Positions 15,450 to 35,666 of a DNA stretch of 64,000 nucleotides are shown piece by piece. The notes under the pieces were generated by a model. The model made no database searches. It worked only from the letters and a program-made list of their open reading frames with translations, and was not told the origin of the DNA. Source of the DNA: Penicillus capitatus (taxonomy: Eukaryota; Plantae; Chlorophyta); contig OZ287704.1 of NCBI GenBank assembly GCA_965649825.1, positions 298,101-362,100 on the forward strand, read 5' to 3'. Numbering within the stretch: position 1 is the first letter of the stretch; each line of letters starts with the position of its first letter. Position numbers and translations under genes: made by a program.

Positions 15450-17242
15450 ATGAAGCTTTCTACGGCGCTCCTTTCAGTCGTTGTGCTCCTCGTGCGTCTT
15501 CATGCGAACCTGCGATTGAAAGCCTGGCTAAATGTGGAACGCAGGGGGCCTTGTCAACTGTGTCTGCACGTTCAGTTTTGACTTTGCCAGGTAGACAATC
15601 ACACCCAAACACCGTTCGTCTATGAACCATGGGACGGGGGAGACGTTAAGCTTCGCCGTTTGTCACGTCAATTTCAAAAATTCGTTGCGTCTCGTGTATC
15701 ACATTGAACGGGACGACGATGTGTCGAATTCCGCCCGAGGTTCTCTCCCTTTTTCGAGTCGAAATGGGATAGTCGGTCGGATTAGAAATGCCTGCTCGTT
15801 CTGCCTGTGACTGAGCATCGATACGTTTCTCGCTTATCGTTTGAGGAATGGATAACCGTTAGTAGAATTCCGCAGGCGAATGGTCGATTCACTTGCGCCC
15901 GGAGTCGTAGAAATTTCAAAATCGAGACAACGCATGCTTTGTCGCCCATTGAGGACGCCGATGCCTCTATCGTTTTACTAACTGCCTTCTTAACGCAACC
16001 GTTGTGAATCGATCGCTCTTTCACCACGTTCAGTCATGGGCTAACAATGGTATGATGCTTTGTAGCAGCAAAATGTGGTTATGACAGCTGCGACAAGTGT
16101 GCTTTCCCTCTCAAATGCGTGTCAGAAGAGAAGGACGAATGCAAACGTATGAGTGTTGTCTGTGTCATGATGATGCTTATGTATGTTTGTATTGAGCAGC
16201 TGTTTGCACAATTGTGAAAGACGATTGCAACAAAGGTAAGTTTGTTCCCTACACGTTTGCGTTCTTATCACATGGCTGCAGATTATGTTCCAAAGGAAAA
16301 ATGCGAGACGAAATGCGTAAAGGTGCCGTTCAAAAAGTGCGACAACAAAGAGGTGGAGAAATGTGATGTGAAAATTGAGAAAGTCTGCAAGAACGTGCCC
16401 AAGAAAGAGTGCAAACCTGTGAAGAAGCAAAAATGCGAAGATGTGCCGAAGAAGGTCTGCAAGAAAGTCCCAGATACTGTTTGCAAGAAAGTTCCCGATG
16501 TGAAATGCTACGACGTTCCAAAACAAGAATGCAAATACGTGCCAGACTGCAAAGAGGTCATTGTCCCGAAATGCATCGATGTCCCTGAGAAGAAATGCGA
16601 GAAGAAGCCTGAGAACAAATGCATTTACGTGCCGAAGAAGGTCTGCAAGAAAGTGCCAAAGACAGAGTGCCCGAAGGTTTACAAACCATGCAAGCTGGGG
16701 GACAAATATTGCACATCCCCCAAGTGCATTACCGTCTATAAGGATGAATGCAAGGTCGAGAAGGAGGAAAAGTGCACGCCTGTCTACAAAAACGATTGCA
16801 AAACCGAATATGTGAAGAAATGCGTCGACGAAAAGAAGAAGGTCTGCGACAAGAAGGAGGTCTGCTTCACTAAGACAGAGAAGAAGTGCGAGAAAACTCA
16901 GAAAGACGAATGCAAGACAATCGAGAAAGAAGAATGCGAGACCATTACAGAGACAGTGTGCAAGTATGTCGACGAAGTAGAATGCGATGACAAACTGGTG
17001 CCAAAATGCGAAGACGTTCCGAAAAAGAATTGTTACACTGTTACCGTACCTGACTGCAAGACTGAGTTCAAGGATGAGTGCAAGGAAGAATGCAAGCCCG
17101 TGCCAAGTAAGGACGACATGTCCTGTTGCGTGTGTATGAATAGTGCGTGATGCTCTTTGCAGGTATCCCTAAACCCTGTGAACCGAAGAAGGTTTGCAAA
17201 CCGGTCTGTGTAAAGAAGATTTCTTACTGTTGCAAATACTGA
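15450..17242 (+). CDS. Secreted cysteine-rich C-x7 repeat protein A (K/E/V/P-rich), about 6 exons
   Basis: Signal peptide MKLSTALLSVVVLLGALSTVSA assembled from exons 15450-15491 and 15545-15590. Main exon in ORF 16242-17150 has CKKVPxxV-type repeats; last exon ends KKISYCCKY* (TGA 17240-17242). Confidence 0.85.
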
Positions 17243-18324
17243 GGCAAGTACAGAGAAGGAGGGATACTTGTCCTGTTTTGCCGTTCTGCCATTCCGAAAC
17301 ATCAACTTATGACTCAATAGATTGTAGATAGATTATCGCTGTGTACAGTGCTGCGAATTTTCACGGATGCAATGCAGCGCCTGTGATCTCTATCTCTAAG
17401 AAGCATAAAGTATTGTTCACGAACTATTCTTGTCTGCCGAGTTGTGATAAAACGCGATTGCTGCGCGTTGGTTTCCTTTCTTTGTTGACCTGAGACTGAC
17501 ACCCCAGTTGGGAGAGCACGTCGTTGCTGAACAATCCGGTTGATTGAAATCATTTAACCTACTTGAAATTTGTGATACATGAGCTTCTTTCTCGCGTACG
17601 TTCGCCGATGTCGTGCCACGGGCAGAGTACATCTGCCGCTGTGCGAGGAGACATTCTTGGTAACATGCAAAGCGACCTGTCAGGTGACAGTTCTTATCTC
17701 TCAGACTTCCTGCCCCGTCTCAGCGGAAAAAGCTAAACCATTGATTCTGTTTCGTTTCAATACGCCATTCCATGCCTTCGTATGAAGGCTAGAATCTTCA
17801 GCTGCGTTTGAAGAACGGTCGGCTGTTTGCATGAAATTTTTCCGAGGTGGAAATGTCGAACATTTCTTGTCTCGAATGGCTCTTAGCCACAGCAGTCCTC
17901 TCAAATGGCTCAAATCGCTCACCGAGACAGTTCATCCCTTGCTGGCTTCGTACCACAGGATGTAACGCGACCTTGGACGGCCAAAGAGGCCACTGTCTAG
18001 TGGTCGAGGAACAACGAGGCAATCTATTCGTTGTATTTGAGTCAACACCAACCAACAGCCAACAACGCATTCGCTTTTCTGTGTCTCAGAGGGATTCAAG
18101 GGAGAAAACGGTTTGAAACTGTCCCCTCAGAGCAGCGGTCCTCCTGTCTCGATCTATTGATGGACATGCTGAAATCAACGTGAGGTTTGCAGAAGAAGTT
18201 CTGCCACAACCATAGGAACAGCGGTTAGATTGTTCGTGCGGGCGAGCATAAATTCTGAAGCAGGCTTTCTTTGGCACTCGACTCCACTGCACTTGCCATT
18301 TTTTTGCGAAGAATCCTGACAACG

Positions 18325-20515
18325 ATGCGTACGTTCCTGCTTTGGTCCGTTGCATGTATCCTACTGGTATGCTCTTTACCTTCTCGGCATACGCGGCATC
18401 TGAGACTACATTGCTTTAGAGTACAGCCTTCCGCTCCGAGGCACGTACCTTGCAAGGCGAAAAGGATATTGAAATCACTATCACAAGTACGAAAGCCAAG
18501 GCGTTTAGGGCGTCGACCATTAACGGATTGTCGTTGTGTAGCTTGCGACTATTGTAAGCCTGGATACAAATGCGTTGCAAAGAAGTTCCAAGCATGCTCA
18601 GACGGTACGCTTGCTTTGATATTCATAGGCCCGTGAAGAATTCTGTGTGCTGCAGAACAAATCTGCGAAGACGCGGAAGTGTGCGTTCCTGGTAAGCCTT
18701 AGCAGACGCCTCGGTCTTTGGCGGTTACACTTGTGGGTGGTGCAGATCCGAATCCGCCGAAGATTTTCTGCGAACACGAAGAGAAATGCGAGACCGTTTC
18801 CAACAAAACGTGCAAGAAGATTGACATTGAAGAGTGCGAAGAGATTATTGAAAAGAAATGTGGACCAGTTCCTCGCAAGGAGTGCAGACTGGTGGCAAAG
18901 AAAGAAAACTGCCGCATGACTCAGGAGGAAGTGTGCGACAAAGTGCCAGAGCACGTCTGCACGAAAGTCCCGAAGGAGGTCTGTGACAAAGTGCCAGACA
19001 AGGAATGCAAGAAAGTTCCGGAGAAGGTCTGCAAGAAGGTCCCCGAGAAGGTTTGCAAGAAAGTTCCCGAAGACATCTGCAAAAAAGTGCCGGAGGAAGT
19101 GTGCACAAAAGTCCCTGACAAGGAATGCAAGAAAGTTCCTGAGAAAGTTTGCAAGAAAGTTCCGGAAGACGTATGCGAAGATGTGAAGGATCAGGTCTGC
19201 ATTCCCGTTGAAAAGTGTGACAAAGTGCCACGCGAAGTCTGTAAACCAGTCGAGAAGCTCGACTGCCCTACAAAGAAAGTGGAGGAATGTAAAAAGGTCC
19301 CTCAAGAGAAGTGTGACAAGGTGAAGGTGCCATTCTGCAAGACGGTTCCCGAAGAGGAATGCAAGATCGTCAAAACCAAAAAGTGTGATAAGGTTCCAGA
19401 ACAAAAGTGTGAGAAAAAGACGAAGAAGGTGTGCGGAGACCTGGACGATGGCAAGTGTAAGACGATCCCGATTAACATCTGCAAAGAAGTGCCGAAGAAG
19501 GTCTGCAAGCCAGAGCCAAAGAAGTTCTGCGGTGACGAACTGGATGGCAAGAAGGCCGGTTTTGGATGTATCATCAAGGACGATGTCGTCTGCAAAGAAG
19601 TGTATCAAAAAGTTTGCGCAAAGATCGAGAAAGAGATCTGTAAAGGCTACGGATTCCCACTCTGCGAAGATGTCGAGGAGGAAGAGTGTGAGGAGGTGGT
19701 CGTTGACAAATGTGAAGATGTCGATGAGGAAGTGTGTGACATCGTTGACAAGAAAGTGTGTGACGAAGTCGAAGAGGACAAGTGTGAAACGATTGAAGTC
19801 GATGATTGCAAACTCGTTGACAAAACCGACTGCAAGACGATCACGGAGGAGAAATGCGAGACGATCTTGGAAAACAAGTGTACAACGGTGGACGACTGCA
19901 AGGATATCGTGAAGAAAGATTGCAAGAAGGTCGACAAAGACGTGTGCGAAGACATCGAGAAGGATGTCTGTGAAGACATCGAGAAAGATGATTGCAAGTT
20001 TGTGGAGAAAGATGTCTGCGAAAAAGTCGACAAAGACGTGTGCGATGATATCGAGAAGGATGTCTGTGAAGACATCGAGAAAGATGAGTGCAAAGATATC
20101 GAGAGAGATGTGTGCACAACGATTGAGGAAGTCGCCTGCAAAGATATCGAGAAAGAAGTGTGCAGCCTGGTAGACAAAGAGGTTTGCGATTCGAAAGAAG
20201 AACCGGAGTGTAACTATAAAGACTATGAGGAATGTATCGATACAATCAAGAAGGGCAACTGTCAACTTGTTGCCAAAGACGTCTGCAATGATGAGCCCAA
20301 GGAAGTGTGCAAGCAAGTCCCAACTGGCAAGTGTGACATTCCACCCGGTAAGGCCATATCCATGACATCTGGTTCGCTCTGATGATGAATGATCTGTAGC
20401 TGAGAAATGCGGCAATACTGCTTGTGCTTATGGTACAATGTGTGAGATAAAGAATCAATGCCGACCTGCTCACTGCAAAGAGAAGGAAGGATACTGTTGC
20501 CTGCCTCTCTGGTGA
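18325..20515 (+). CDS. Secreted cysteine-rich C-x7 repeat protein B (basic N-half, acidic C-half), about 6 exons
   Basis: Signal peptide MRTFLLWSVACILLSTAFRSEA. Main exon in ORF 18718-20382 has CKKVPEKV then CEDIEKDV repeats; last exon ends EKEGYCCLPLW* (TGA 20513-20515). Confidence 0.87.
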
Positions 20516-20904: not shown

Positions 20905-22505
20905 ATGGAGTCCGACAAGAGGTCACTCTACTGAACGCATTCATCAGCTCTCTTAGTAGCCATGAGAATCAGGCGTGGCCAATCGGTACCAAGCATCGAA
21001 GTCGCATGAAAGCAACGATGCCTATATGGAAAGGTTCGAAACGGCCTTCCGGAATCTACAGACACTCAATCTCGAGACAAAGCCCAGGTGAGAGGTCTCT
21101 AAGTTTCGCCGCCCTGTTGGTGATGATGGCGACGACTTTCAACGTGCGCGACGATTCTGATGGTCACGTGCGACGACGTGTCGTGTCACAGTTCGTCGTC
21201 GGTCGAGACGGAATACAAAGGTCCGACCTCTGCGCCATCGCCGCAGAAAAGTTACGCAAAGTCGAGATGGGCACATGCAGAAGTCCAATCAATTGCAGGG
21301 ATAGATCCAGATCCAGGTAAGGACGACGCGTAGCGGCGGCCGATCTGTGACGTCAGTATTGACAGATACATCACTCGATATCTCATCGCTTCCGCTGCTA
21401 TGCAGCAGCGTTGACGAACACGGCGACGAAATCGCCGTCGGTTCGGCAGATCACGGCGTCTACGTTGTCGATCTCGTCAAAAAACGGATCAAGCGGACGC
21501 TCTATACGAAGAGACATGGACACAGCGAGTATGTGTGTTCGCAGCCATTGGCGTACGGATCGTTATTCTGTGTCTGTCAGGTGGGTGACATGTGTGACGC
21601 ATACAGACGAGGGTCGGGTCGTTTCTGGAGGCATGGACAGCAAACTGTGTCTGTGGCACCGAGATGCGACGACATGTCTCGATCTCATCGGCCACCAAGG
21701 CTCCATCTCCGGCGTCAAATGCCATGGAGAGGCGATCGTGAGTGCCAGCTACGATAAAACAGTGAGAATCTGGAACGGTCGGAATGGCAGAGGCTATGCG
21801 ACACTTACCGAACATGCGGCGCCGATTCTGGATCTCATCTCCGGTCCGGCGCATCTCATGGCCACAAGAGATCGAGGTGGAAGCGCCATCATCTGGGATA
21901 CCGCATCGGCGGCACTCGTATGGCGTTTAAAGAAGATTCACAAAGGGCATGTGACGGCCATGGAGTGGATTCCGTCAAATGCATCCACTGCCGCACCTGA
22001 CCATCACCATTTCTTAACGGGAGGTCACGATGGGTTCCTGAGAATGTGGGATCTCCGCGATCGTGCCAATGTCTTCAAAGCCAAAGTCCACGGTGTTCGA
22101 GACACCGCCGCCGTCAACGTGATTCTGACCCATCCCGTCAACACGAATCTCCTCATCACCTGCGGCGCAGATAAAAGCGTCAAAGTACGGCGCGTCGAGA
22201 TGGATCGAAAGGACGATGTCGATGTCTAGGTCTGGGATCGTCGCGATGCCTGTGCCAGTTCGTTGTGGGAAGTGGGTCTGCTCGATTCTCCGTACTCTGC
22301 CGGATTCTTCGGTCGTCTGTTGATCTGCAGCGGAGGCGATGGATCGCTTCTCGTTTTGGACGTTGAATCGCTGGACGTCAAACAAATGATCAACACCCAG
22401 CAACACGCCATGCGGTTCATCCATGCCATTCCCAATCAGCTGATCTGTGGAGGAGATGCTGGAAACCTCTTCCTCTACAATGCCACGTCCACCTCGTCTG
22501 CTTAG
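20905..22505 (+). CDS. WD40-repeat protein of unknown function; 5' exons uncertain
   Basis: GHSEWVTCV..GRVVSGGMDSKLCLW, GHQGSISGVK...SASYDKTVRIW and HKGHVTAMEW...LTGGHDGFLRMWD repeats. Confidence 0.8.
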
Positions 22506-22724: not shown

Positions 22725-25700
22725 TCACGGGTGTTGCTTTGGAGACGTCGCTTCGTCCAAAAGGTAAACGAGACCTCTGAAATTGAATCCGCTGTGATTC
22801 GATAGTGACATCTCACATGTACGACTGGTTGAGTAACCATCTTTGCAGTCGGATGGATAGCTCATGTGTTGCAGAGCCGAAGCAGTCAGCTCAGGATATC
22901 GCATGCCACGATCGCCGGCCATCCCGCAGCAGGGAACGCCGCTGGGGACCACCTCGTGTGCACACTTGCTCGCCAGTTCCAAGAAACTGCGTTCGATGCC
23001 CATCTTCTTGGAAGAACAGGGGACATGAACGGCGATGGAATCACGAACCTTCGTAAATTCGAGCTTGTCCATCATGAAGAGCTTGAAGAAAGTGACTGGC
23101 TCATAGAGTGAGAATCTGAGTTTGGAATTGGCACCTCCGCTCTTGATCGTGTAGAGACAGGGGCTCGTGTCACACACGACAGGATATTTGCCATTCTCTG
23201 ATGCTTCGAGAATGGCTTCTTCCATTTCATTTAGTTTGTTCTGGGCAGCTGTTTTGAATCCTCTCGTGTTGAACATCATGCCGCAGCACAGGTTCTTAAC
23301 GCCCTTTGGGTAGATCACCTCAAAATTAGCTTTTTGGAACAGAGAGAGCAGCTTCTCGTGAACTGAAGCCGTTTCGGAGTCGCCATGAGCAGGTCCCATC
23401 ATACGGGTGACACAGGCGGGTATATAAACGACTTTCTGAGGCACTTTGGACGCGGATGGCTGGACTGGATAGGGATCGGGCAATTTGGATGCACCCTTTG
23501 GCATGTAAGGATTCCAGGCGGGAACATAGTTCCCCGACAGCCGATTGAGCGCCTCCGAGATTTTCACCAGCGGCGTGGAACCCATAATCCGATGCGAAAA
23601 GCTCACGGCATTCAGCAACGGTGGCACCATGGTGTTCATGAATCCAAAGTTGTTCGCCAGGGAGATCGAGATGCGATTGGCCGTTGTCTGCGGTTCCAAC
23701 AGATCCACTCTGAGCGATTTAATCAGCTCTCCCGTATTGATCTTCACCGGACACTTCTCTTGACACATGCCATCTGCTGCACACGTCTGCTCGCCCTGAT
23801 ACTCAAAGAGCTCTTCAAATTCCTTCAGCCTCTCCTCCTCCTGCGGCGTCTTCTGTGACAAGGCTCTCAAACGGTTGATCTCACGGAAGACAGTGATACG
23901 CTGACGAGGGGTCAGACTGAGATCTCTGGAAGGACAGTTACTCTCACAGAAACCGCACTCAATGCAACGGTTGACGATGTCGTGAGCTGGAGGACTAGGT
24001 TTTAAGAACTTGACGTGTGTGGAGGGATCTCTGTTGAGCACGACACCTGGATTGAGAATGTTCTCTGGATCGAACAGCGCTTTCAGTTCCCACATTAATT
24101 CATAAGCCTTCGTTCCCCATTCCATCTCCACAAAAGGTGCAACATTCCTCCCTGTTCCGTGCTCTCCTTTCAGCGATCCGCTGTACTTTGTAGCCACGAT
24201 GTAGCTCATCTCTGACATCATGTCTGAAAAACGCTGCACTTCTTCTGTGGTACGAAAGCCTTGGGAGAAGATGAGATGCAGATTGCCTTCCAGCGCGTGT
24301 CCCAGACAGCAAGCATCATTGTAACCATAGCGCTGGAACATGTCAATGAGATCTGAGGTCATGGCTGCGAGATTGTGGACGGGACATGCCACATCTTCAA
24401 TCAACATGGATGTTCCTGTCTCTCTTGCGGCGCCCACCATTGGAATCAATCCCTTGCGCACATTCCAGTATGTTGTGTAGACTTCGACATCCTCAGTGAA
24501 GGGATAGGCATCGAGTGCCTTGAGAGAATTGGCTTGGTTCCCAAAACGGATTTTCCCTTCTTCCAACACATTGCTGACCTCTTTGATGCGTTCTTTCAGA
24601 TCATCGGCCGACCGTCCTCTACACTCAATCAGCAATGCAGCTGCCATAGGGTCTGCGCCATCGATATCTGGTACGAGCTTTGGCATCGTCTCATGCAGCA
24701 TACATTCTCTGAGACATGCACGATCAAAAAGCTCAACGGCATCGACCGATGTGCCGTCTCTCAACAGCGAAGCCGCCCTGCACGACAGCTGCCTCGCTCT
24801 GATCATGTGTAAAAAGAATGGAACGTACGTGCAGGCATCTTCCAAATGCGGAAAGACAATGAACGCTGAAGCTTTGTGTGGCCATTCAGGAACGGTATTG
24901 TACGTTGCTTGAGAGATGAAAGCAAACGTCCCTTCGGATCCAATCATCAGTCTTTTGACAATCTCAATGGGATCAGAAATCGGAAAATCGACCAAAGCAT
25001 TCAGAGAGTAGCCCGTTGTACATTTGATCGAGAACTTCCTCCGAATGAGACTCACCAGTTCTCTATCCTTCTGCACGCGTTGGACGAGCGACACAATTCC
25101 AGCAATCAGCTTCTTGTGACTCTGTAGGAATGCCTCGCGACTGGCTGGGTCACTCGTGTCCAATACTGTTCCATCCGCAAAGACGATACGCATGTCCCTC
25201 AATGTATGATACGTATTCTGCGATACGCCGCAGCACATTCCTGACGAATTGTTGGCCACGATGCCGCCAATCATGCAGCTATCGATCGACGATGGATCCG
25301 GTCCGATCTTGTACTGCACGGGGAGCTTGTGTTTGTTCTGGTATGATTTGAGAATTCGATTCACTTCTCCGCCGATCAGTCCCGGCTGCACCGTGATGGA
25401 ACTCCCATCTTCCTAACAAGACCATGCCGTACTCAGTAGATGACTTTCGTCCAACTACGTGGTCCTTACATGGACTGTATAGTCTCGGAAATTCTTTCCG
25501 GTGTGCGAAAGCTTAAGTAAGACGGAATCAGTGATAGCCTGTCCCGAGAGCGATGTGCCTGCTGCTCGAAAAGTCACTGGGACTTTGTGTTTCGAGGCGA
25601 TGGGCAAAATGCGTCGAATCTCTTCTTCGTTAATCACTTTGACGACGAGTTTGGGATTGAGGCGATAGAAACTGGCGTCGGTGCCGTACGCAAAGGTTCG

Positions 25701-31085: not shown

Positions 31086-34000
31086 ATGAATTCACAGTCA
31101 CGACTCAGGACCTTAATGTCACGACCATTCAATCGATTTTTTACGGACAAACGACAGGAACCAGTGAAGGAGTTCAGTGAAGATGATCAGAAACGTATGC
31201 GGCGGATGTTGAGCAGAGGTATCGTGAGTGTGCGGGAACTGGTTGACCGATACAACAAATCTGACGACACACATCGCAAACTGCTCCTTCCTTGGCTCAA
31301 GGACTTTATCAAATACATTGACGACACAGCAGGTGTGGGTCTGAGAGGTGGTCGATTTCTGGAATACGCAGAACTTGCGAATGTCAGCATCCACAGTGAG
31401 AAAGACAAAGAATTTCTGCAGAATCTCCTTGAAAGCTTGAGCAAGAGAATTAAAGAGGAGAATGATTTTTCGACAGAGCACCTCTTTGACGCATTGCATG
31501 ATGTTCTCATGCGCATGGACCCGAAAGCGTTCGAAAATCGCGGGATTAAATTGAGACAGCTGGTGGACAATTTGATTGCGGCGCTCGAACAGCAAGGGGA
31601 TGTTCCCGATCACTTGCTGGCAAGGCACAGAACTCCCATTTACGCAATCCACCAAGCCCTTTTTCTCCTAAAAAATACGCCGGGATACAAACTGACTGAA
31701 AAGATACAAATAGAGCTGTTTCAGAATATCGAAAAATGCCAAATAGTAGGGATCGAAAAAAACTTCTATCCCTATCACTACCAATGCCGTTTGGTTAAAC
31801 AAGGAATTTTGCGATTAACGGCCAAGACAGAGAAGCCGCCATGGATACAGAGACTCCATGCTTCTCTTTATGCCTGCTGGGGTGGGATGTACTTTCTTCA
31901 CATGCTGAAAGGTCTCTGTGCATTGGATTGCGATCCGAGTGCCGCTGAGGGCGTTATGAAGAACTTAATAGAAGCGCGCAGAAGACTCAACATGTTGACC
32001 ACAGAAGTTTGGTACGATAAACTTCAGGCATATCATGAATCCATCATCAAGAGTCCGATGGACGCTGCTGGTGTCGAATCCGAGACAATTTTGAAAGAAG
32101 TGCCGGAGAAATCGGCGAAGGACCTGCTGTTTGGTATCCTTCGTGAACTCTCGACTGCTGTGCTTTCTGATCACGAATCGTTAAGCAGTGAATCGTCTAC
32201 GCTGGCAAGTACCTGTTTCGAGAGACTGTCTAGCACGCTGGACATGTTGAGCGCCAAAATCGGACAGCAGGATTTCAAGAATGATCCGTCCTTTCTCGAG
32301 CCAGTTCTTAATGCGCTCTGCGAGATATATATTCGTAACAGTGATTATAGAGAGAAAACATGGTCAATTCTGGAACGTCTCGCATTGAATCAAGAATTCC
32401 AGTCTAAAAAGCTGCTGCCTTCTTGGGCGAAAGATGAAGAAACTTTGGAAACGCATATCAGGGATCTCTCGAGGAATCTGAAAGGCAGTCGACACAACAT
32501 TCTCTTCCATGAGGTTCGATCGAATCTTACCTGGTGGGTGGATGATGAAGATTTGACCACGGTCGCGGAGGCATTGAAGAAAGCGTACACTAAATCGGAT
32601 CCCAGCAGCGTAAATCAACACCTATCTCGAAATCGAATCGTCAACAATATCGTTGTGTTCTTGCAGATGCAATCGCCTTCGGTCCACTCAAGGAAGATGG
32701 AGATCGAAGATCTAAGATTTTCCTTTGCTATTCGGGGCGCTGTCTGTTCAGACGAAACGAACATCTTGGCATCGGATGAGAGCCGGCGCTCGTGGTGGCA
32801 GCAGGAAATGCCAAAGAGAATGGAACTTGGCCTTGCAGATATCTTAATAGAGAACAAGATTCCTGGCTTGGCAAAAATCGAATCTGGAAAAGCTCGCAGA
32901 GTTCTCTTGACGGGAAGGCCATGTACTGGGAAGTCGACTTTGGGCAGAAAAATTGCGCGCGGCTGGGCGAATGGCTCTATCATCGAAGGCTTCGACATGG
33001 TGTACGTGCTCGATTCTAAAATGATCTACAGTGGACATGATCGCAGTCAGGATGTATCCTCTGCCCGGAAGACTTTGCAACAGATGACAGCAACAAGTCT
33101 GATATCAGAATTTAGGATAGATTTCACGGATGACTTGGAAAAAGTTATTGATCATAATCTGGATCTCGATACCACTTTGCTTATCATCGACGTCGCAACG
33201 ACAGGGGATTTCATGTATAAATGGATCCAGCAGGCGATGCAACGATCATGCAGTTTGCTCGTGTTACGAGATCCCATCAGTGCGTGGCGTGGTGAGGTGA
33301 AATTCGATGTCGAATTGGAATTGATTGGGCTGACGGACGATCAGATGATTGCCGACATTACTGAGTACTTTGAAGGACGTGCACAAACGGCACGTGACCT
33401 GAAGTCCTTCTTGGGAAGGAGTCCAGATGTCAGGCGAATGGCGCATCATCCATTGACGCTGGAAACGCTGTGCCATATGTGGGATAACTCCGAGAAGGGA
33501 CAAGACCACATTTCAACGATTCCTCGATCTGCCTTGTATTCCAATGTGATCGATTGCATCACTATGAAACGTACTAACGAATTTGGAAGAACGAAGGACC
33601 AGAAGGAATTCCTCTACGATCTGCAGTCGGCAGTTTTCAACCATCTGATCAAGAGCAGCCCTGCGAATTGGACTGGATTCGATGGGGAGGTCCACATCCC
33701 GTCGGTGGCTATCAAGAAAATCACTTCATCGTTGATGCAGCCTAAAGATATGGATGATGTTTTGAAGTTTAAAGCGTATTTCTTTGGAAAGCATATCGCC
33801 AGTATTCAGAGGGGAGACAACAAGAAGGAGAGAGAACATGTAGACGCCTTCTTGATGGATCATATGTACGAGAGTTCGTGCATGACGGCCATGTGCATTG
33901 CCGTTGAAGACACTGCCGATCACGCGCCTACGACGATGGAGCTGCTGTTATCGTTCGTCGAGGAAAAAGCGGCCGAGACCATCGGTCTGCAGCCTCTGCT

Positions 34001-35666
34001 TCTGAAGCTGACACTCATCGAGAGCTTTCTCTCTGCCGATGAAGACAGAAAGAGAACTGTAAAAAACAACGTTTCCTCTATCATCAACGCTTTCATAGCT
34101 TTGATCAAACGGAATGCAGAAGAGGACACGCCGTTGTGGAAAGTTCTGGTGAGACAGCTGGAACAGATGCCATTGGTACGCGAGGCATTTCCCCAAATCG
34201 ATAAAGAATTCAAGAAGAGGTTGAAAAACGGATTGTATCTCTCTCCTTCAAGCTTTGAGTCTGCAGCGAGGCTCTTTCGCGGAGCATCTCCGTTTGGGAA
34301 AGAACTCATGAAAGAATTAATCGAAGACTACCCGACAGCAAGCCCAAATGTGCAACAACAACTGATTTTATGCATCTCCTGCATCCTGACCCACGCTCCA
34401 GATGCTAGCAGTAAACTCATGTCGCACATAAAGCAGTCGTTGGAGGACTCTGCTGATCTCAAAGTTCGTATTGTTGTTCTGGAACGGCTCGATGTATTTA
34501 TCTCGGCATCACCAAAAGACAAGGATGAATTAATAGATTATCTTCAGCGAGCCATCAGGAGTGATAACCAAAGAGTGGCGAAGACAGCCTGGCGACAAAT
34601 CTCAAAATGCATCCAGCTGTTCAGCGATGAACAAAAAGAACAGCTTTGGAAGGAGATGAAGAACAAGGTGAAGAGCGAAGAATCGTTTATGAGGGGAGTT
34701 GTCATGGAACAGATCGGTTGTGTATTCAAGGCGATTCCAAGCAAGAAAATGTTTCTCATCGATCTTCTGCGGAATGCTCTGAATGATAAAGAAGAAGAGG
34801 TCCTGATGGCCGCGCTCGAACAGATTCCTTATTTCCAATCAAATGAGCTGCAGAAGGATGGAGATGGTCATCCTTTGCGCAGAGCATTCTCCAAAAAGAA
34901 TCACAGAATCTGCAAATTTGTGATGCGACAGTTGAAGCATTTTGTCGAAGCCGTACCGAGTGATGAAGCCTTGTGTATGGAGTTACTGAAAGAAGGCTTG
35001 GAGCACAAGAATAAGACGGTCCATGAAACAGCCGTCGACGAAATTCCCAATCTCTGCTCAGCATTGCCCCATAGAAGAGACGACCTTTTCGAATTGTGGA
35101 GAACAACAGTCACTGATGGAGAGTCGAGAAAATTCACAGGCATAAAACAGATCGGTGCGATGACGCGCCTCGTGCCAGAGAGAAAGGACGAAATCCGTGG
35201 CCTGCTGACGAATGGAATACATCACACAGACGAAAATGTGAAACAGCAGGCATTGCTACAAATACCGGAATTTGTTTGTGCGACGGACGAGAAGCTTCCA
35301 GGAGTGCTGGTGTCTCTTAACACTGCACTGAGGGATAAAAGCAGCATTGTGCGGGAAGCGGCGCACAAAGCCATTCAGCAAACGTCATTGGCAGGGCTTA
35401 TCGAACTGGCTTGGATCGATATCCTTGGTTTTAAGCAGGAAATTATCAAAGAGATCGGCTACAGGTTGCTCGACGCCGCAGTAACGGTCACACCTCTGCC
35501 AGATGACAAGGACGGAAATTGCTTAAGATTAACGGCGTACACATGGTCCGGCAAAGTTGAATGGGATCGGCTCAGCTCGAGCGTTAAAGATCTTGTGCGG
35601 TCTATTGTGAAATCCGTAAACGATGAATATCCTGAACTGTGTCAAATGCCTAAAGTATGTGAATGA
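31086..35666 (+). CDS. Intronless 1526-aa STAND/NACHT NTPase with N-terminal helical domain and C-terminal HEAT repeats (NLR-like)
   Basis: RVLLTGRPCTGKSTLGRKIARGWA (Walker A), FDMVYVL, LELIGLTDDQM...YF and MAHHPLTLETLCHMW (NACHT HD1/WH). HEAT-like repeats follow (LKVRIVVLERL, LRNALNDKEEEVLMAALEQI, LNTALRDKSSIVREAAHKAI). Confidence 0.85.
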   Translation: MNSQSRLRTLMSRPFNRFFTDKRQEPVKEFSEDDQKRMRRMLSRGIVSVRELVDRYNKSDDTHRKLLLPWLKDFIKYIDDTAGVGLRGGRFLEYAELANVSIHSEKDKEFLQNLLESLSKRIKEENDFSTEHLFDALHDVLMRMDPKAFENRGIKLRQLVDNLIAALEQQGDVPDHLLARHRTPIYAIHQALFLLKNTPGYKLTEKIQIELFQNIEKCQIVGIEKNFYPYHYQCRLVKQGILRLTAKTEKPPWIQRLHASLYACWGGMYFLHMLKGLCALDCDPSAAEGVMKNLIEARRRLNMLTTEVWYDKLQAYHESIIKSPMDAAGVESETILKEVPEKSAKDLLFGILRELSTAVLSDHESLSSESSTLASTCFERLSSTLDMLSAKIGQQDFKNDPSFLEPVLNALCEIYIRNSDYREKTWSILERLALNQEFQSKKLLPSWAKDEETLETHIRDLSRNLKGSRHNILFHEVRSNLTWWVDDEDLTTVAEALKKAYTKSDPSSVNQHLSRNRIVNNIVVFLQMQSPSVHSRKMEIEDLRFSFAIRGAVCSDETNILASDESRRSWWQQEMPKRMELGLADILIENKIPGLAKIESGKARRVLLTGRPCTGKSTLGRKIARGWANGSIIEGFDMVYVLDSKMIYSGHDRSQDVSSARKTLQQMTATSLISEFRIDFTDDLEKVIDHNLDLDTTLLIIDVATTGDFMYKWIQQAMQRSCSLLVLRDPISAWRGEVKFDVELELIGLTDDQMIADITEYFEGRAQTARDLKSFLGRSPDVRRMAHHPLTLETLCHMWDNSEKGQDHISTIPRSALYSNVIDCITMKRTNEFGRTKDQKEFLYDLQSAVFNHLIKSSPANWTGFDGEVHIPSVAIKKITSSLMQPKDMDDVLKFKAYFFGKHIASIQRGDNKKEREHVDAFLMDHMYESSCMTAMCIAVEDTADHAPTTMELLLSFVEEKAAETIGLQPLLLKLTLIESFLSADEDRKRTVKNNVSSIINAFIALIKRNAEEDTPLWKVLVRQLEQMPLVREAFPQIDKEFKKRLKNGLYLSPSSFESAARLFRGASPFGKELMKELIEDYPTASPNVQQQLILCISCILTHAPDASSKLMSHIKQSLEDSADLKVRIVVLERLDVFISASPKDKDELIDYLQRAIRSDNQRVAKTAWRQISKCIQLFSDEQKEQLWKEMKNKVKSEESFMRGVVMEQIGCVFKAIPSKKMFLIDLLRNALNDKEEEVLMAALEQIPYFQSNELQKDGDGHPLRRAFSKKNHRICKFVMRQLKHFVEAVPSDEALCMELLKEGLEHKNKTVHETAVDEIPNLCSALPHRRDDLFELWRTTVTDGESRKFTGIKQIGAMTRLVPERKDEIRGLLTNGIHHTDENVKQQALLQIPEFVCATDEKLPGVLVSLNTALRDKSSIVREAAHKAIQQTSLAGLIELAWIDILGFKQEIIKEIGYRLLDAAVTVTPLPDDKDGNCLRLTAYTWSGKVEWDRLSSSVKDLVRSIVKSVNDEYPELCQMPKVCE

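What the first reader, a model, noticed from the sequence alone, without database searches (positions are those of the whole stretch)
18325..20515. Protein B: a longer, charge-zippered version of the same hairpin, with a two-rung mismatch
Around the central loop (C-GDELDGKKAGFG-C) both arms have 13 x7 rungs and then one x5 rung (IPVEK / TTVDD). The two atypical Gly-rich rungs (GDLDDGK and KGYGFPL) fall at the same position, rung 4. Further out each arm has one x8 rung followed by four x7 rungs. Between the x5 and x8 rungs the N-arm has 12 rungs and the C-arm 14. The N-arm is basic (CKKVPEKV) and the C-arm acidic (CEDIEKDV); for example EKKTKKV faces EDVEEEE. My count is 76 Cys. Inference: a roughly 90-nm polyampholyte hairpin. 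The two surplus C-arm rungs are either an assembly or allelic loss of 48 bp in the KKVP array, or free Cys for intermolecular cross-linking. The acidic face could bind Ca2+.
Basis: partly seen in the sequence, partly recalled or inferred. Interest (0 to 1): 0.85.

Follow-up and report, generated by a model that had tools for sequence, protein, structure and literature searches.

The report
Giant disulfide-laddered hairpin protein gene
A Caulerpa-like green alga encodes a secreted protein that most likely folds back on itself into a roughly 90-nm two-stranded ribbon pinned by nearly 40 disulfide "rungs", and look-alikes that no searched database or paper describes occur in predatory bacteria and copepods.

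Summary
Protein B (18325-20515, +) is a real six-exon gene under purifying selection (dN/dS 0.13). It encodes a 641-aa secreted protein with 80 Cys. Spacing reads 4x7, x8, 12x7, x5, 13x7 | x12 loop | 13x7, x5, 14x7, x8, 4x7.

The hairpin reading is strongly supported:
- The spacing is mirrored, not directly repeated (chance about 9e-4).
- Charges of facing rungs anticorrelate (r = -0.67).
- Neighbouring paralog A is mirrored out to both termini.
- Of 85 look-alike proteins, 65 have equal arms, from 6 to 21 rungs.
- An AlphaFold model of a bacterial member (pLDDT 77.7) is one long beta-hairpin whose turn sits at the centre of the Cys palindrome.

The 12-versus-14 mismatch is not an assembly or allelic artefact. 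It is identical in three other contigs from two assemblies, including a species 84% identical (dS 0.61), with all 66 main-exon Cys conserved and no indels.

- The N-arm is only weakly basic (+9), the C-arm strongly acidic (-45).
- The mature chain has 79 Cys, an odd number.

No Pfam, NCBIfam, PDB or literature description was found. Function is inferred to be a rigid extracellular strut. Calcium binding is untested.

The parts
18325..20515 (+). Protein B gene, start codon to stop codon. Six exons: 18325-18366, 18420-18486, 18542-18604, 18656-18691, 18746-20347, 20400-20515. Product 641 aa.
   Evidence: Model built. All five introns are GT..AG and 51-55 nt long. Comparison with L003 supports introns 1 and 2: a 1-nt indel and a highly diverged 55-nt block lie in the introns, and a 6-nt in-frame indel lies in exon 2. 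dN/dS is 0.13 against L003.
18325..18366 (+). Exon 1, encoding most of the signal peptide (MRTFLLWSVACILL...).
   Evidence: Hydrophobic N-terminus read directly from the sequence. The same exon design is seen in paralog A (MKLSTALLSVVVLL) and in L003.
18542..18786 (+). N-terminal Cys-rich cap, with spacings 2, 5, 7, 5, 5, 10, 5. It spans exons 3-5 and is interrupted by introns 18605-18655 and 18692-18745.
   Evidence: It is homologous rung by rung to the N-cap of protein A.
18787..19530 (+). N-arm of the ladder: 4 x7, x8 (18886-18909), 12 x7, x5 (19201-19215), 13 x7. Rung consensus is K-K-V-P-E-K-V.
19531..19566 (+). Central x12 loop GDELDGKKAGFG, the predicted hairpin turn.
   Evidence: It is the centre of the spacing palindrome. 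It is conserved as GYGLDGKKAGFG in L003.
19567..20347 (+). C-arm of the ladder: 13 x7, x5 (19882-19896), 14 x7, x8 (20236-20259), 4 x7. The last rung is completed in exon 6. Rung consensus is E-D-I-E-K-D-V.
19435..19455 (+). Atypical rung 4 of the N-arm, GDLDDGK. It faces KGYGFPL (19642-19662).
   Evidence: Across the three species/strains compared, the pair changes only at the last residue of the C-arm rung (KGYGFPI in L003).
20188..20232 (+). DSKEEPE-C-NYKDYEE, two C-arm rungs next to the x8 rung that lack the V/I pattern. They are candidates for the two surplus rungs.
   Evidence: Identical in L003 and L008 and recognisable in the more distant L004 as DTKEEPV/WTKEYEE. Charge fit favours skipping them in the window protein but not in L003, so this assignment is tentative.
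19930..20153 (+). Tandem duplication with a 96-nt period (four rungs) inside the distal C-arm.
   Evidence: Tandem Repeats Finder: period 96, 1.9-2.3 copies, 82-88% matches.
18929..19166 (+). Tandem array with 24- and 72-nt periods encoding the KKVPEKV rungs of the distal N-arm.
20400..20515 (+). Exon 6: the C-terminal Cys-rich cap (spacings 4, 5, 5, 4, 6, 0, ending CCLPLW) and the stop codon.
   Evidence: Conserved in L003.
15450..17242 (+). Paralog protein A, the upstream tandem neighbour. A signal-peptide exon lies at about 15450. Further exons are 16066-16146, 16200-16235, 16282-17106 and 17163-17242.
   Evidence: It has 48 Cys with spacing 4 2 5 7 3 6 9 3 7*9 5 7*5 6 6 4 7*5 5 7*9 3 9 5 3 6 0, mirrored out to both termini.

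Best explanation
Protein B is a secreted structural protein of a Caulerpa-like siphonous green alga.

How it most likely folds (inferred):
1. After signal-peptide cleavage the chain folds back at the GDELDGKKAGFG loop.
2. The N-arm and C-arm run antiparallel as one long two-stranded beta-ribbon.
3. Each Cys bonds to its mirror-image Cys on the other arm. This gives a ladder of about 32 arm disulfides plus 6 or so in the terminal caps, spaced every 8 residues.

Geometry of each cell, from the rung consensus:
- Cys and Pro4 sit at non-hydrogen-bonded sites on one face, flanked by K2-D6' and K6-D2' cross-strand salt bridges.
- Val/Ile at positions 3 and 7 form a hydrophobic stripe on the other face.

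The result is a stiff, strongly anionic rod about 85-95 nm long with both termini knotted together at one end.

The two extra C-arm rungs are a fixed feature. Most likely they form a 16-residue bulge closed by its own local disulfide next to the x8 kink. One further Cys is left unpaired for an intermolecular bond.

Arm length evolves by tandem duplication of rungs, under selection that keeps the arms matched.

Function (inferred, weakest step): a rigid strut or cross-linker in the cell wall, trabeculae or wound plug.

Shown: the sequence architecture, its conservation and the family-wide arm matching. Inferred: the disulfide connectivity, the beta geometry and the function.
For: 1. The spacing is mirrored, not directly repeated. 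In B the x5 and x8 rungs are mirrored (chance 9e-4). The arms of A are exactly mirrored (chance 4e-3) and the mirroring continues into its caps. DNA duplication cannot produce a mirror image, so this points to selection at the protein level.

2. Charges of facing rungs anticorrelate: r = -0.67 (3 of 20000 permutations). For the inner 13 rungs r = -0.68 in the window and -0.76 in L003.

3. Arms co-vary across the family. 65 of 85 look-alikes have equal rung numbers, from 6 to 21. The predatory-bacterial set shows 4/4, 6/6, 7/7, 8/8, 9/9, 10/10, 11/11, 13/13 and 16/16.

4. The AlphaFold2 model of bacterial member P0160 with a 38-sequence alignment has pLDDT 77.7. Strands run 35-189 and 196-352. 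The only central break is 190-195, exactly the palindrome centre where every Cys pair sums to 385.

5. Parity fits beta-strands. Irregular spacings flanked by x7 rungs are mostly odd (315 odd versus 86 even). The even values (x4, x6, x8) are the ones seen as central-loop spacings in the hairpin patterns. Val/Ile at positions 3 and 7 and Pro at 4 are shared by the algal and bacterial rungs.

6. It is a real, constrained gene: dN/dS 0.13, dS 0.61, 66 of 66 Cys conserved and no indels against L003.

7. The caps of A and B are homologous, with paired spacings (7,6), (5,0), (2,-). This fixes x8 opposite x8 in B.
Against: - There is no direct structural or disulfide data for B.
- AlphaFold2 on B alone failed (pLDDT 38.6).
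- The supporting model is of a distant bacterial protein, and its mid-arm confidence is low (41-50).
- Relatedness to the bacterial and copepod proteins rests on composition-biased scores. The top two phmmer hits have 12 and 0 Cys, so the shared architecture could be convergent.
- B breaks the family rule of equal arms between its markers.
- The position of the bulge could not be fixed; the charge fit disagrees between species.
- The odd Cys count depends on my splice model.
- No expression or localisation data exist, so the function is conjecture.
Confidence: 0.7

Rival explanations
1. Same hairpin, but with no bulge. The arms pair one-to-one all the way out, and the x8 rungs are simply offset by two rungs. 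A one-residue beta-bulge on the N strand at rung 27 is compensated by one on the C strand at rung 29. The irregular cap rungs then pair imperfectly.
For: Counted from the loop, both sides have exactly 38 rungs, with 293 versus 292 residues to the last paired Cys. That leaves only the final Cys of the C-terminal CC unpaired, which matches the odd total of 79 (counts from the spacing list). N-arm x8,x7,x7 and C-arm x7,x7,x8 have equal lengths.
Against: Protein A has an unambiguous register, and its N-cap is 15 residues longer than its C-cap. Its terminal pairings (7,6), (5,0), (2,-) recur in B only if x8 faces x8. In the look-alikes I inspected, irregular rungs usually face irregular rungs. The cap spacings would mismatch badly: 5/7, 10/7, 7/5, 2/6.
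Confidence: 0.17
2. The mirrored spacing serves intermolecular pairing. Two extended chains lie antiparallel, the N-arm of one on the C-arm of the other. They form a rod about 180 nm long or, with staggered register, a disulfide-linked polymer.
For: A spacing palindrome fits an antiparallel homodimer as well as it fits a hairpin (inference). The arm mismatch and the odd Cys count would be tolerated in a staggered polymer.
Against: Intramolecular closure is kinetically favoured. The monomer AlphaFold model of P0160 folds as a hairpin with the turn at the palindrome centre. However, a monomer model cannot test dimers. Many bacterial members have tight x4, x6 or x8 centres suited to a two-residue turn. 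Copepod members carry loops of 145-323 residues between equal arms, which looks like a hairpin with an insert.
Confidence: 0.08
3. The arms are not beta-strands. Each 8-residue repeat forms a one-turn helix started by Pro, stacking into a helical-screw solenoid like the designed protein HeliScrew4. Cysteines then make local or inter-turn bonds.
For: The only PDB sequence hit is 9zem HeliScrew4 (E 3.5e-7), aligned in register with the KVPE repeats. Its paper describes 8-mer helical screws with Pro at helix position N1 (bioRxiv 10.64898/2025.12.04.691947). Single-sequence AlphaFold2 drew scattered short helices.
Against: The alignment shares little beyond the periodic Pro-Glu. The C-arm has no periodic Pro. 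That AlphaFold model has pLDDT 38.6. A solenoid does not explain mirrored irregular rungs, equal arms across the family, even-distance parity or facing-rung charge anticorrelation. The alignment-based model of a family member is all-beta.
Confidence: 0.04
4. The 12-versus-14 mismatch is an assembly collapse or an allelic deletion of 48 bp in the KKVP array.
For: The N-arm array is a 24/72-nt tandem repeat, a sequence type prone to collapse.
Against: The layout is identical in L008 (98.7% identical, a different assembly), and in L003 and L007, two contigs of a third assembly from a species 84.4% identical with dS 0.61. There are no indels and all Cys are conserved.
Confidence: 0.01

Closest known systems
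Cystine-ladder beta-hairpin peptides (theta-defensins, tachyplesin, protegrin, gomesin); properties recalled from general knowledge, review PMC13001179 was listed but not read
   Same: Two antiparallel strands joined by a turn and held by parallel cross-strand disulfides at mirrored positions.
   Different: Those are cationic antimicrobial peptides of about 17-25 residues with 2-3 disulfides spaced 2-4 residues apart. B is a 641-aa anionic protein with a predicted ladder of about 38 disulfides spaced 8 residues apart, and it shows no sequence relationship to them.
Small proline-rich proteins / cornifin (Pfam PF02389)
   Same: Eight-residue repeats containing K-V-P-E and Cys. They are extracellular or envelope structural proteins that get cross-linked. 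This is the only Pfam model that lights up.
   Different: The score of 31.3 bits is below the 34.8-bit cut-off. From general knowledge, SPRRs are small cytosolic transglutaminase substrates of animal epidermis, with no signal peptide. No mirrored two-arm architecture is known for them.
[quoted passage not shown]
   Same: A secreted, fibre-forming structural protein built of many tandem disulfide-rich units, with about 10% Cys.
   Different: According to the abstract read, CREMP modules are self-contained, with local Cys1-3 and Cys2-4 bonds and flexible linkers. B's spacing implies long-range bonds between the N and C halves and a single continuous rod.
HeliScrew4, a designed 8-residue-repeat helical screw (PDB 9zem)
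   Same: An 8-residue period with Pro-Glu at fixed positions. It is the only PDB sequence match.
   Different: It is a designed, Cys-free, all-helical protein with a hydrophobic core. B has Cys every 8 residues, a Pro-free C-arm and family evidence for beta-strands.
Uncharacterised look-alikes found here: secreted proteins of Bdellovibrionales/Bacteriovorax (e.g. P0160, P0344, P0362) and hypothetical proteins of the copepods Tigriopus californicus (TRY75543.1) and, from its Tk-prefixed gene name, probably T. kingsejongensis
   Same: C-x7-C rungs with a shared x-x-V-P-x-x-V tendency, mirrored irregular rungs, equal arms and a signal peptide.
   Different: The bacterial members carry a C-terminal domain that resembles Ig-like folds only weakly and have neutral Q/T/R/H-rich rungs. 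The copepod members have long inserts in the loop. B is nearly all ladder, has strongly asymmetric charge and has two unmatched rungs. Common descent versus convergence is unresolved.

Membership tests
Mirrored C-x7-C ladder-hairpin proteins (uncurated group defined here) | N-terminal signal peptide | tested here: met
   MRTFLLWSVACILLSTAFRSEA was read from the spliced model. This is judged by eye; no predictor was available.
Mirrored C-x7-C ladder-hairpin proteins (uncurated group defined here) | Long runs of C-x7-C, with Val/Ile at rung positions 3 and 7 and frequent Pro at position 4 | tested here: met
   B has 61 x7 rungs. Position 3 is V/I in 80% of them, and the N-arm has Pro at position 4 in 60%. 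The same pattern is seen in 452 bacterial rungs.
Mirrored C-x7-C ladder-hairpin proteins (uncurated group defined here) | Irregular rungs placed as mirror images about a central loop | tested here: met
   x5 lies 13 rungs from the loop on both arms. x8 lies four rungs from the outer end on both arms. The chance of both is 9e-4.
Mirrored C-x7-C ladder-hairpin proteins (uncurated group defined here) | Equal number of rungs on the two arms | tested here: not met
   There are 12 versus 14 rungs between the x5 and x8 markers, conserved in orthologs. By contrast 65 of 85 look-alikes have equal arms. Total rungs from loop to termini are 38 and 38, so the failure is local.
Mirrored C-x7-C ladder-hairpin proteins (uncurated group defined here) | Mirror-image Cys residues are disulfide-bonded across a two-stranded beta-hairpin | not testable with these tools
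   Support is indirect only. The AlphaFold model of P0160 places the turn at the palindrome centre. The model of B itself was uninformative.
Cornifin / SPRR (Pfam PF02389) | Score at or above Pfam's gathering cut-off | tested here: not met
   31.3 bits against a cut-off of 34.8.
Cornifin / SPRR (Pfam PF02389) | Gln/Lys-rich head and tail domains for transglutaminase cross-linking, and no signal peptide (from general knowledge) | tested here: not met
   B has a signal peptide, Cys-rich caps instead of Gln-rich ends, and only 11 Gln in total.
Cystine-ladder beta-hairpin antimicrobial peptides | Short cationic peptide with 2-3 cross-strand disulfides (from general knowledge) | tested here: not met
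   The mature chain is 619 aa with net charge -37.
HeliScrew-type 8-mer helical screw | Every repeat forms a Pro-initiated helix that packs apolar side chains in a core | tested here: inconclusive
   There is a sequence match at E 3.5e-7, but it is limited to the periodic Pro-Glu of the N-arm. The C-arm lacks the Pro. A family member is predicted to be all-beta.

The most novel reading that the evidence does not exclude
B belongs to an undescribed, cross-kingdom class of extracellular proteins: giant cystine-ladder beta-ribbons.

- A single chain is zipped by up to about 39 consecutive cross-strand disulfides into a rigid rod.
- Rod length is set digitally by the number of 8-residue rungs. Arms of 4 to 21 rungs were seen here in predatory bacteria, copepods and a siphonous alga.
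- In this reading B's conserved two-rung surplus and its odd Cys are a built-in knob plus a free thiol, used to link rods into a wall or wound-plug network.
Probability: 0.4. Interest if true: 0.85.

Novelty: new variant of a known kind. Interest (0 to 1): 0.72.

Why it matters
If the ladder is real, this would be by far the longest cross-strand disulfide ladder I know of. It would also be a simple rule for building a stiff protein rod of programmable length from an 8-residue unit.

That bears on three areas:
- protein folding: how are about 39 disulfides zipped in order?
- biomaterials and protein design;
- the poorly known wall and wound-plug proteins of giant single-celled algae.

It also flags a widespread protein group, 650 database representatives at E<1e-3 although many of these are compositional hits, that has no Pfam, NCBIfam, PDB or literature entry I could find.

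Tried and rejected
- AlphaFold2 on B's main exon without an alignment gave pLDDT 38.6 and was unusable.
- Two protein-database searches with B returned no ortholog, although orthologs exist. I reached them through synteny, using the neighbouring glycolate dehydrogenase gene.
- The top phmmer hits, P0148 and P0149, have 12 and 0 Cys, so E-values here are compositional. I did not use them as proof of homology.
- Two scans of JGI metagenomes for further algal orthologs found only one unrelated family member, L009. The N-arm of the more distant species L004 therefore stayed out of reach, because the contig ends inside the gene.
- Locating the surplus rungs by charge fit gave different answers in the window and in L003.
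- Rfam and tRNA scans of the window found nothing.
- Foldseek against the PDB gave no hit at E<=1e-3. The weak hits were mostly Ig-like domains, which I take to match the bacterial C-terminal domain.
- Literature searches on Caulerpa cysteine-rich proteins, wound plugs, cystine ladders, CX7C repeats and Bdellovibrio hairpins found no description of this family.
- I first used a gene model that read through the 5' region (677 aa, 85 Cys). I dropped it because that segment is poorly conserved and its Cys are not conserved in L003.
- Metallothionein-like metal binding and strings of local C-x7-C loops were considered and rejected. Neither explains the mirrored spacing or the matched arms.
Full report
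**What the window is**

The sequence is eukaryotic, with short GT..AG introns.
- The ORF at 22725-25391 (-) is a glycolate/D-lactate dehydrogenase.
- Its best named relative is Caulerpa lentillifera at 85% identity. Bryopsis follows at 71%, and other green algae sit near 67%.
- The window therefore comes from a Caulerpa-like siphonous green alga (Bryopsidales).

**Gene model**

All three reading frames across 18200-20450 were translated. One frame carries the whole protein once short introns are removed.
- My first model read through the 5' region.
- Aligning the 5' end with two orthologous loci showed a 1-nt indel and a very diverged 55-nt block. These fit introns. It also showed a 6-nt in-frame indel inside a conserved peptide, STAFRSEARTLQGEKDIEITIT.
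- The refined model has exons 18325-18366, 18420-18486, 18542-18604, 18656-18691, 18746-20347 and 20400-20515.
- Introns are 53, 55, 51, 54 and 52 nt.
- The product is 641 aa with 80 Cys, or 79 after removal of the signal peptide.

**Check of the observation**

The Cys spacing reads:

2 5 7 5 5 10 5 | 4x7, x8, 12x7, x5, 13x7 | x12 loop | 13x7, x5, 14x7, x8, 4x7 | 4 5 5 4 6 0

- Shuffling rung order within each arm mirrors both the x5 and x8 markers in only 9e-4 of trials.
- Corrections: the Cys count is 80 rather than 76. The N side carries net +9 and the C side -45, so the protein is anionic overall at -37.

**Why a hairpin**

The order of irregular rungs is reversed between the arms. It is not repeated in the same order, so gene duplication cannot have produced it. 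Inverted DNA would not encode Cys at those positions either. The symmetry must therefore be selected in the protein.

Protein A, the upstream paralog, makes the point more cleanly (model).
- Its spacing is 3, 9x7, x5, 5x7, then a tip of 6, 6 and 4, then 5x7, x5, 9x7, 3.
- The arms are an exact mirror (chance 4e-3).
- The mirroring continues into the terminal caps: (9,9), (6,5), (3,3), (7,6).

In B the net charges of facing rungs anticorrelate.
- r = -0.67, reached by 3 of 20000 permutations.
- The inner 13 rungs alone give -0.68 in the window and -0.76 in the ortholog L003.

**Orthologs and the 12/14 mismatch**

Database searches with B itself returned no ortholog. I reached orthologs through the neighbouring dehydrogenase gene.
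- L008 comes from another assembly. B is 98.7% identical there.
- L003 and L007 are two contigs of a third assembly. B is 84.4% identical there.
- L004 is more distant, and the contig ends inside the gene.

In L003, L007 and L008 the main exon has no indels, all 66 Cys are conserved, and the layout is again 12 versus 14.
- Against L003, dS is 0.61 and dN/dS is 0.13.
- The mismatch is therefore a stable feature under selection, not a collapsed repeat or a rare allele.

L004 retains the inner C-arm and the x5 rung, but it has only 6 distal C-arm rungs instead of 14.
- Arm length does change between species.
- The distal C-arm of B holds a 96-nt (four-rung) tandem duplication, and the distal N-arm is a 24/72-nt array. 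Rung duplication is the evident mechanism.
- The N-arm of L004 lies off the contig. The key within-lineage co-variation test could not be run.

**A wider family**

phmmer of B against 1.84 billion representatives gave 650 hits at E<1e-3.
- The scores are partly compositional. The two best hits have 12 and 0 Cys.
- I therefore judged hits by architecture. Many show the same mirrored design.

| Example | Spacing pattern |
|---|---|
| P0150 | 11 7*13 5 7 4 7 5 7*13 12 |
| P0157 | 14 and 14 x7 rungs |
| P0008 | 16 and 16 x7 rungs around a 42-residue loop |
| P0184 | 11 7*7 5 7*4 [145] 7*4 5 7*7 11 |

- P0184 is a hypothetical protein of the copepod Tigriopus californicus. P0174, with a Tk-prefixed gene name, probably comes from T. 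kingsejongensis.
- P0160 sits among bacterial genes (gidA, gidB, parA, parB).
- Its relatives include proteins named from Bdellovibrionales and Bacteriovorax genomes.
- Those relatives follow 11 7*n 5 7 x 7 5 7*n 12, with n = 4, 6, 7, 8, 9, 11, 13 or 16 and always the same on both sides.
- Over all hits with a recognisable centre, 65 of 85 have equal arms, from 6 to 21 rungs. The rest appear to be mostly fragments or proteins with several hairpins.

No Pfam or NCBIfam model covers any of these proteins. The only signal is a sub-threshold Cornifin match.

**Fold**

Irregular spacings flanked by x7 rungs are mostly odd (315 odd versus 86 even).
- Cys-to-Cys distances inside arms are therefore mostly even.
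- The even spacings (x4, x6, x8) are the ones seen as central loops in the hairpin patterns.
- That is what a two-stranded antiparallel beta-ribbon with a two-residue turn requires. All Cys fall on one face at non-hydrogen-bonded sites. (The rule is established beta-sheet geometry; applying it here is my inference.)

The rung consensus is K-K-V-P-E-K-V on the N-arm and E-D-I-E-K-D-V on the C-arm. Laid antiparallel, this gives:
- K2-D6' and K6-D2' pairs, and Pro4 opposite Glu4', on the disulfide face;
- Val/Ile at positions 3 and 7 on the other face.

AlphaFold2 results:
- On B alone it failed (pLDDT 38.6).
- On P0160 with a 38-sequence alignment it gave pLDDT 77.7 and strands 35-189 and 196-352.
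- The single central break, 190-195, is exactly the centre of the Cys palindrome. Every mirrored pair sums to 385, so each Cys lies opposite its mirror partner.
- Confidence is high at the base (87-95) and low in mid-arm (41-50).

Foldseek found no PDB analogue at E<=1e-3. The only PDB sequence hit is the designed 8-mer helical protein HeliScrew4, matched through the periodic Pro-Glu. I treat this as a rival fold, and the family evidence disfavours it.

**Length**

The arms hold 247 and 263 residues (counted). At about 0.33-0.34 nm per residue of beta-strand (established value) this gives 82-89 nm plus the caps.

**The surplus rungs**

Two registers are possible.
- Register (i): x8 faces x8, and two C-arm rungs are looped out.
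- Register (ii): pairing is one-to-one throughout. This gives 38 rungs on each side and 293 versus 292 residues.

I favour (i). The caps of A and B are homologous, and the pairings (7,6), (5,0), (2,-) recur only in that register.
- Under (i) the two surplus Cys can bond to each other.
- One N-terminal Cys is then left free.
- The rungs DSKEEPE and NYKDYEE, next to x8, are atypical, conserved and recognisable in L004. They are candidates for the bulge.
- The charge-fit test does not agree between species.

**Function**

Nothing here measures function. The architecture suggests a secreted, rigid, anionic, Lys-rich rod (115 Lys) that acts as a strut or cross-linker.
- In Caulerpa the obvious sites are the wall, the trabeculae and the wound plug. 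From general knowledge, wound-activated caulerpenyne products cross-link proteins there.
- Calcium binding by the acidic strand is possible but untested.

**Novelty**

Cross-strand cystine ladders are known in small antimicrobial hairpins. Disulfide-rich tandem-repeat structural proteins such as CREMP (PMC12723725) and SPRRs are also known. A single hairpin with dozens of evenly spaced mirror disulfides, arm-matched across bacteria, copepods and an alga, was not found in Pfam, NCBIfam, the PDB or the searchable literature. Absence from those sources is not proof that nobody has described it.

Noticed in passing
window 15450-17242 (+): Protein A, the tandem upstream paralog, has 48 Cys. Its spacing palindrome is exact in the arms and continues to both termini, which makes it the cleanest example of the architecture. 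In orthologs only rungs on the loop-proximal N-arm and at the tip vary: L003 has 7*4 6 6 5 5 and L008 has 7*2 6 7*2.
   Followed up: partly
window 18598-20415 (-): The antisense strand of gene B carries an open frame of 605 aa, longer than the sense ORF of 554 aa. It looks like a by-product of the periodic, stop-poor repeat sequence, and it could mislead ORF-based gene callers.
   Followed up: no
L003 14326-16140, L007 14327-16141, L008 15010-16659: The orthologs of B are called genes on public contigs, yet neither large protein search returned them. Synteny through the neighbouring gene was needed to find them.
   Followed up: partly
proteins P0356, P0357, P0360-P0362, P0364, P0366 (Bacteriovorax-type): These form a variant ladder. 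Spacings cycle 9-8-7 on one arm and 7-8-9 on the other, around five x8 rungs. The palindrome therefore has a 27-residue super-period instead of plain x7.
   Followed up: no
proteins P0006, P0184, P0216, P0198, P0166 (copepod or zooplankton type): Equal arms are separated by loops of 90-320 residues. In P0006 and P0184, the two whose sequences I read, the loop is rich in His, Gly and Lys. The acidic arm comes first and the VP-type arm second, the reverse of protein B.
   Followed up: no
window 31086-35666 (+): An intron-free ORF of 1526 aa has weak NACHT and HEAT-repeat matches. A similar large ORF lies at the corresponding position in L003, L007 and L008.
   Followed up: no
window 22725-25391 (-) and 21411-22229 (+): A glycolate/D-lactate dehydrogenase with an Fe-S domain and a WD40 protein flank gene B. 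The dehydrogenase served as the taxonomic and synteny anchor.
   Followed up: yes
window 19435-19455 and 19531-19566: The rung GDLDDGK and the loop GDELDGKKAGFG share a G-D-x-L-D-(D)-G-K motif rich in Asp and Gly. It is reminiscent of calcium-binding loops, and it is largely conserved in L003 and L008 (the rung is identical; the loop is GYGLDGKKAGFG in L003).
   Followed up: no
protein P0355: One bacterial ladder-hairpin protein carries a copper amine oxidase N-terminal domain after the hairpin. Foldseek gave only weak Ig-like matches for the P0160 model. This suggests the hairpin serves as a stalk for different head domains.
   Followed up: no
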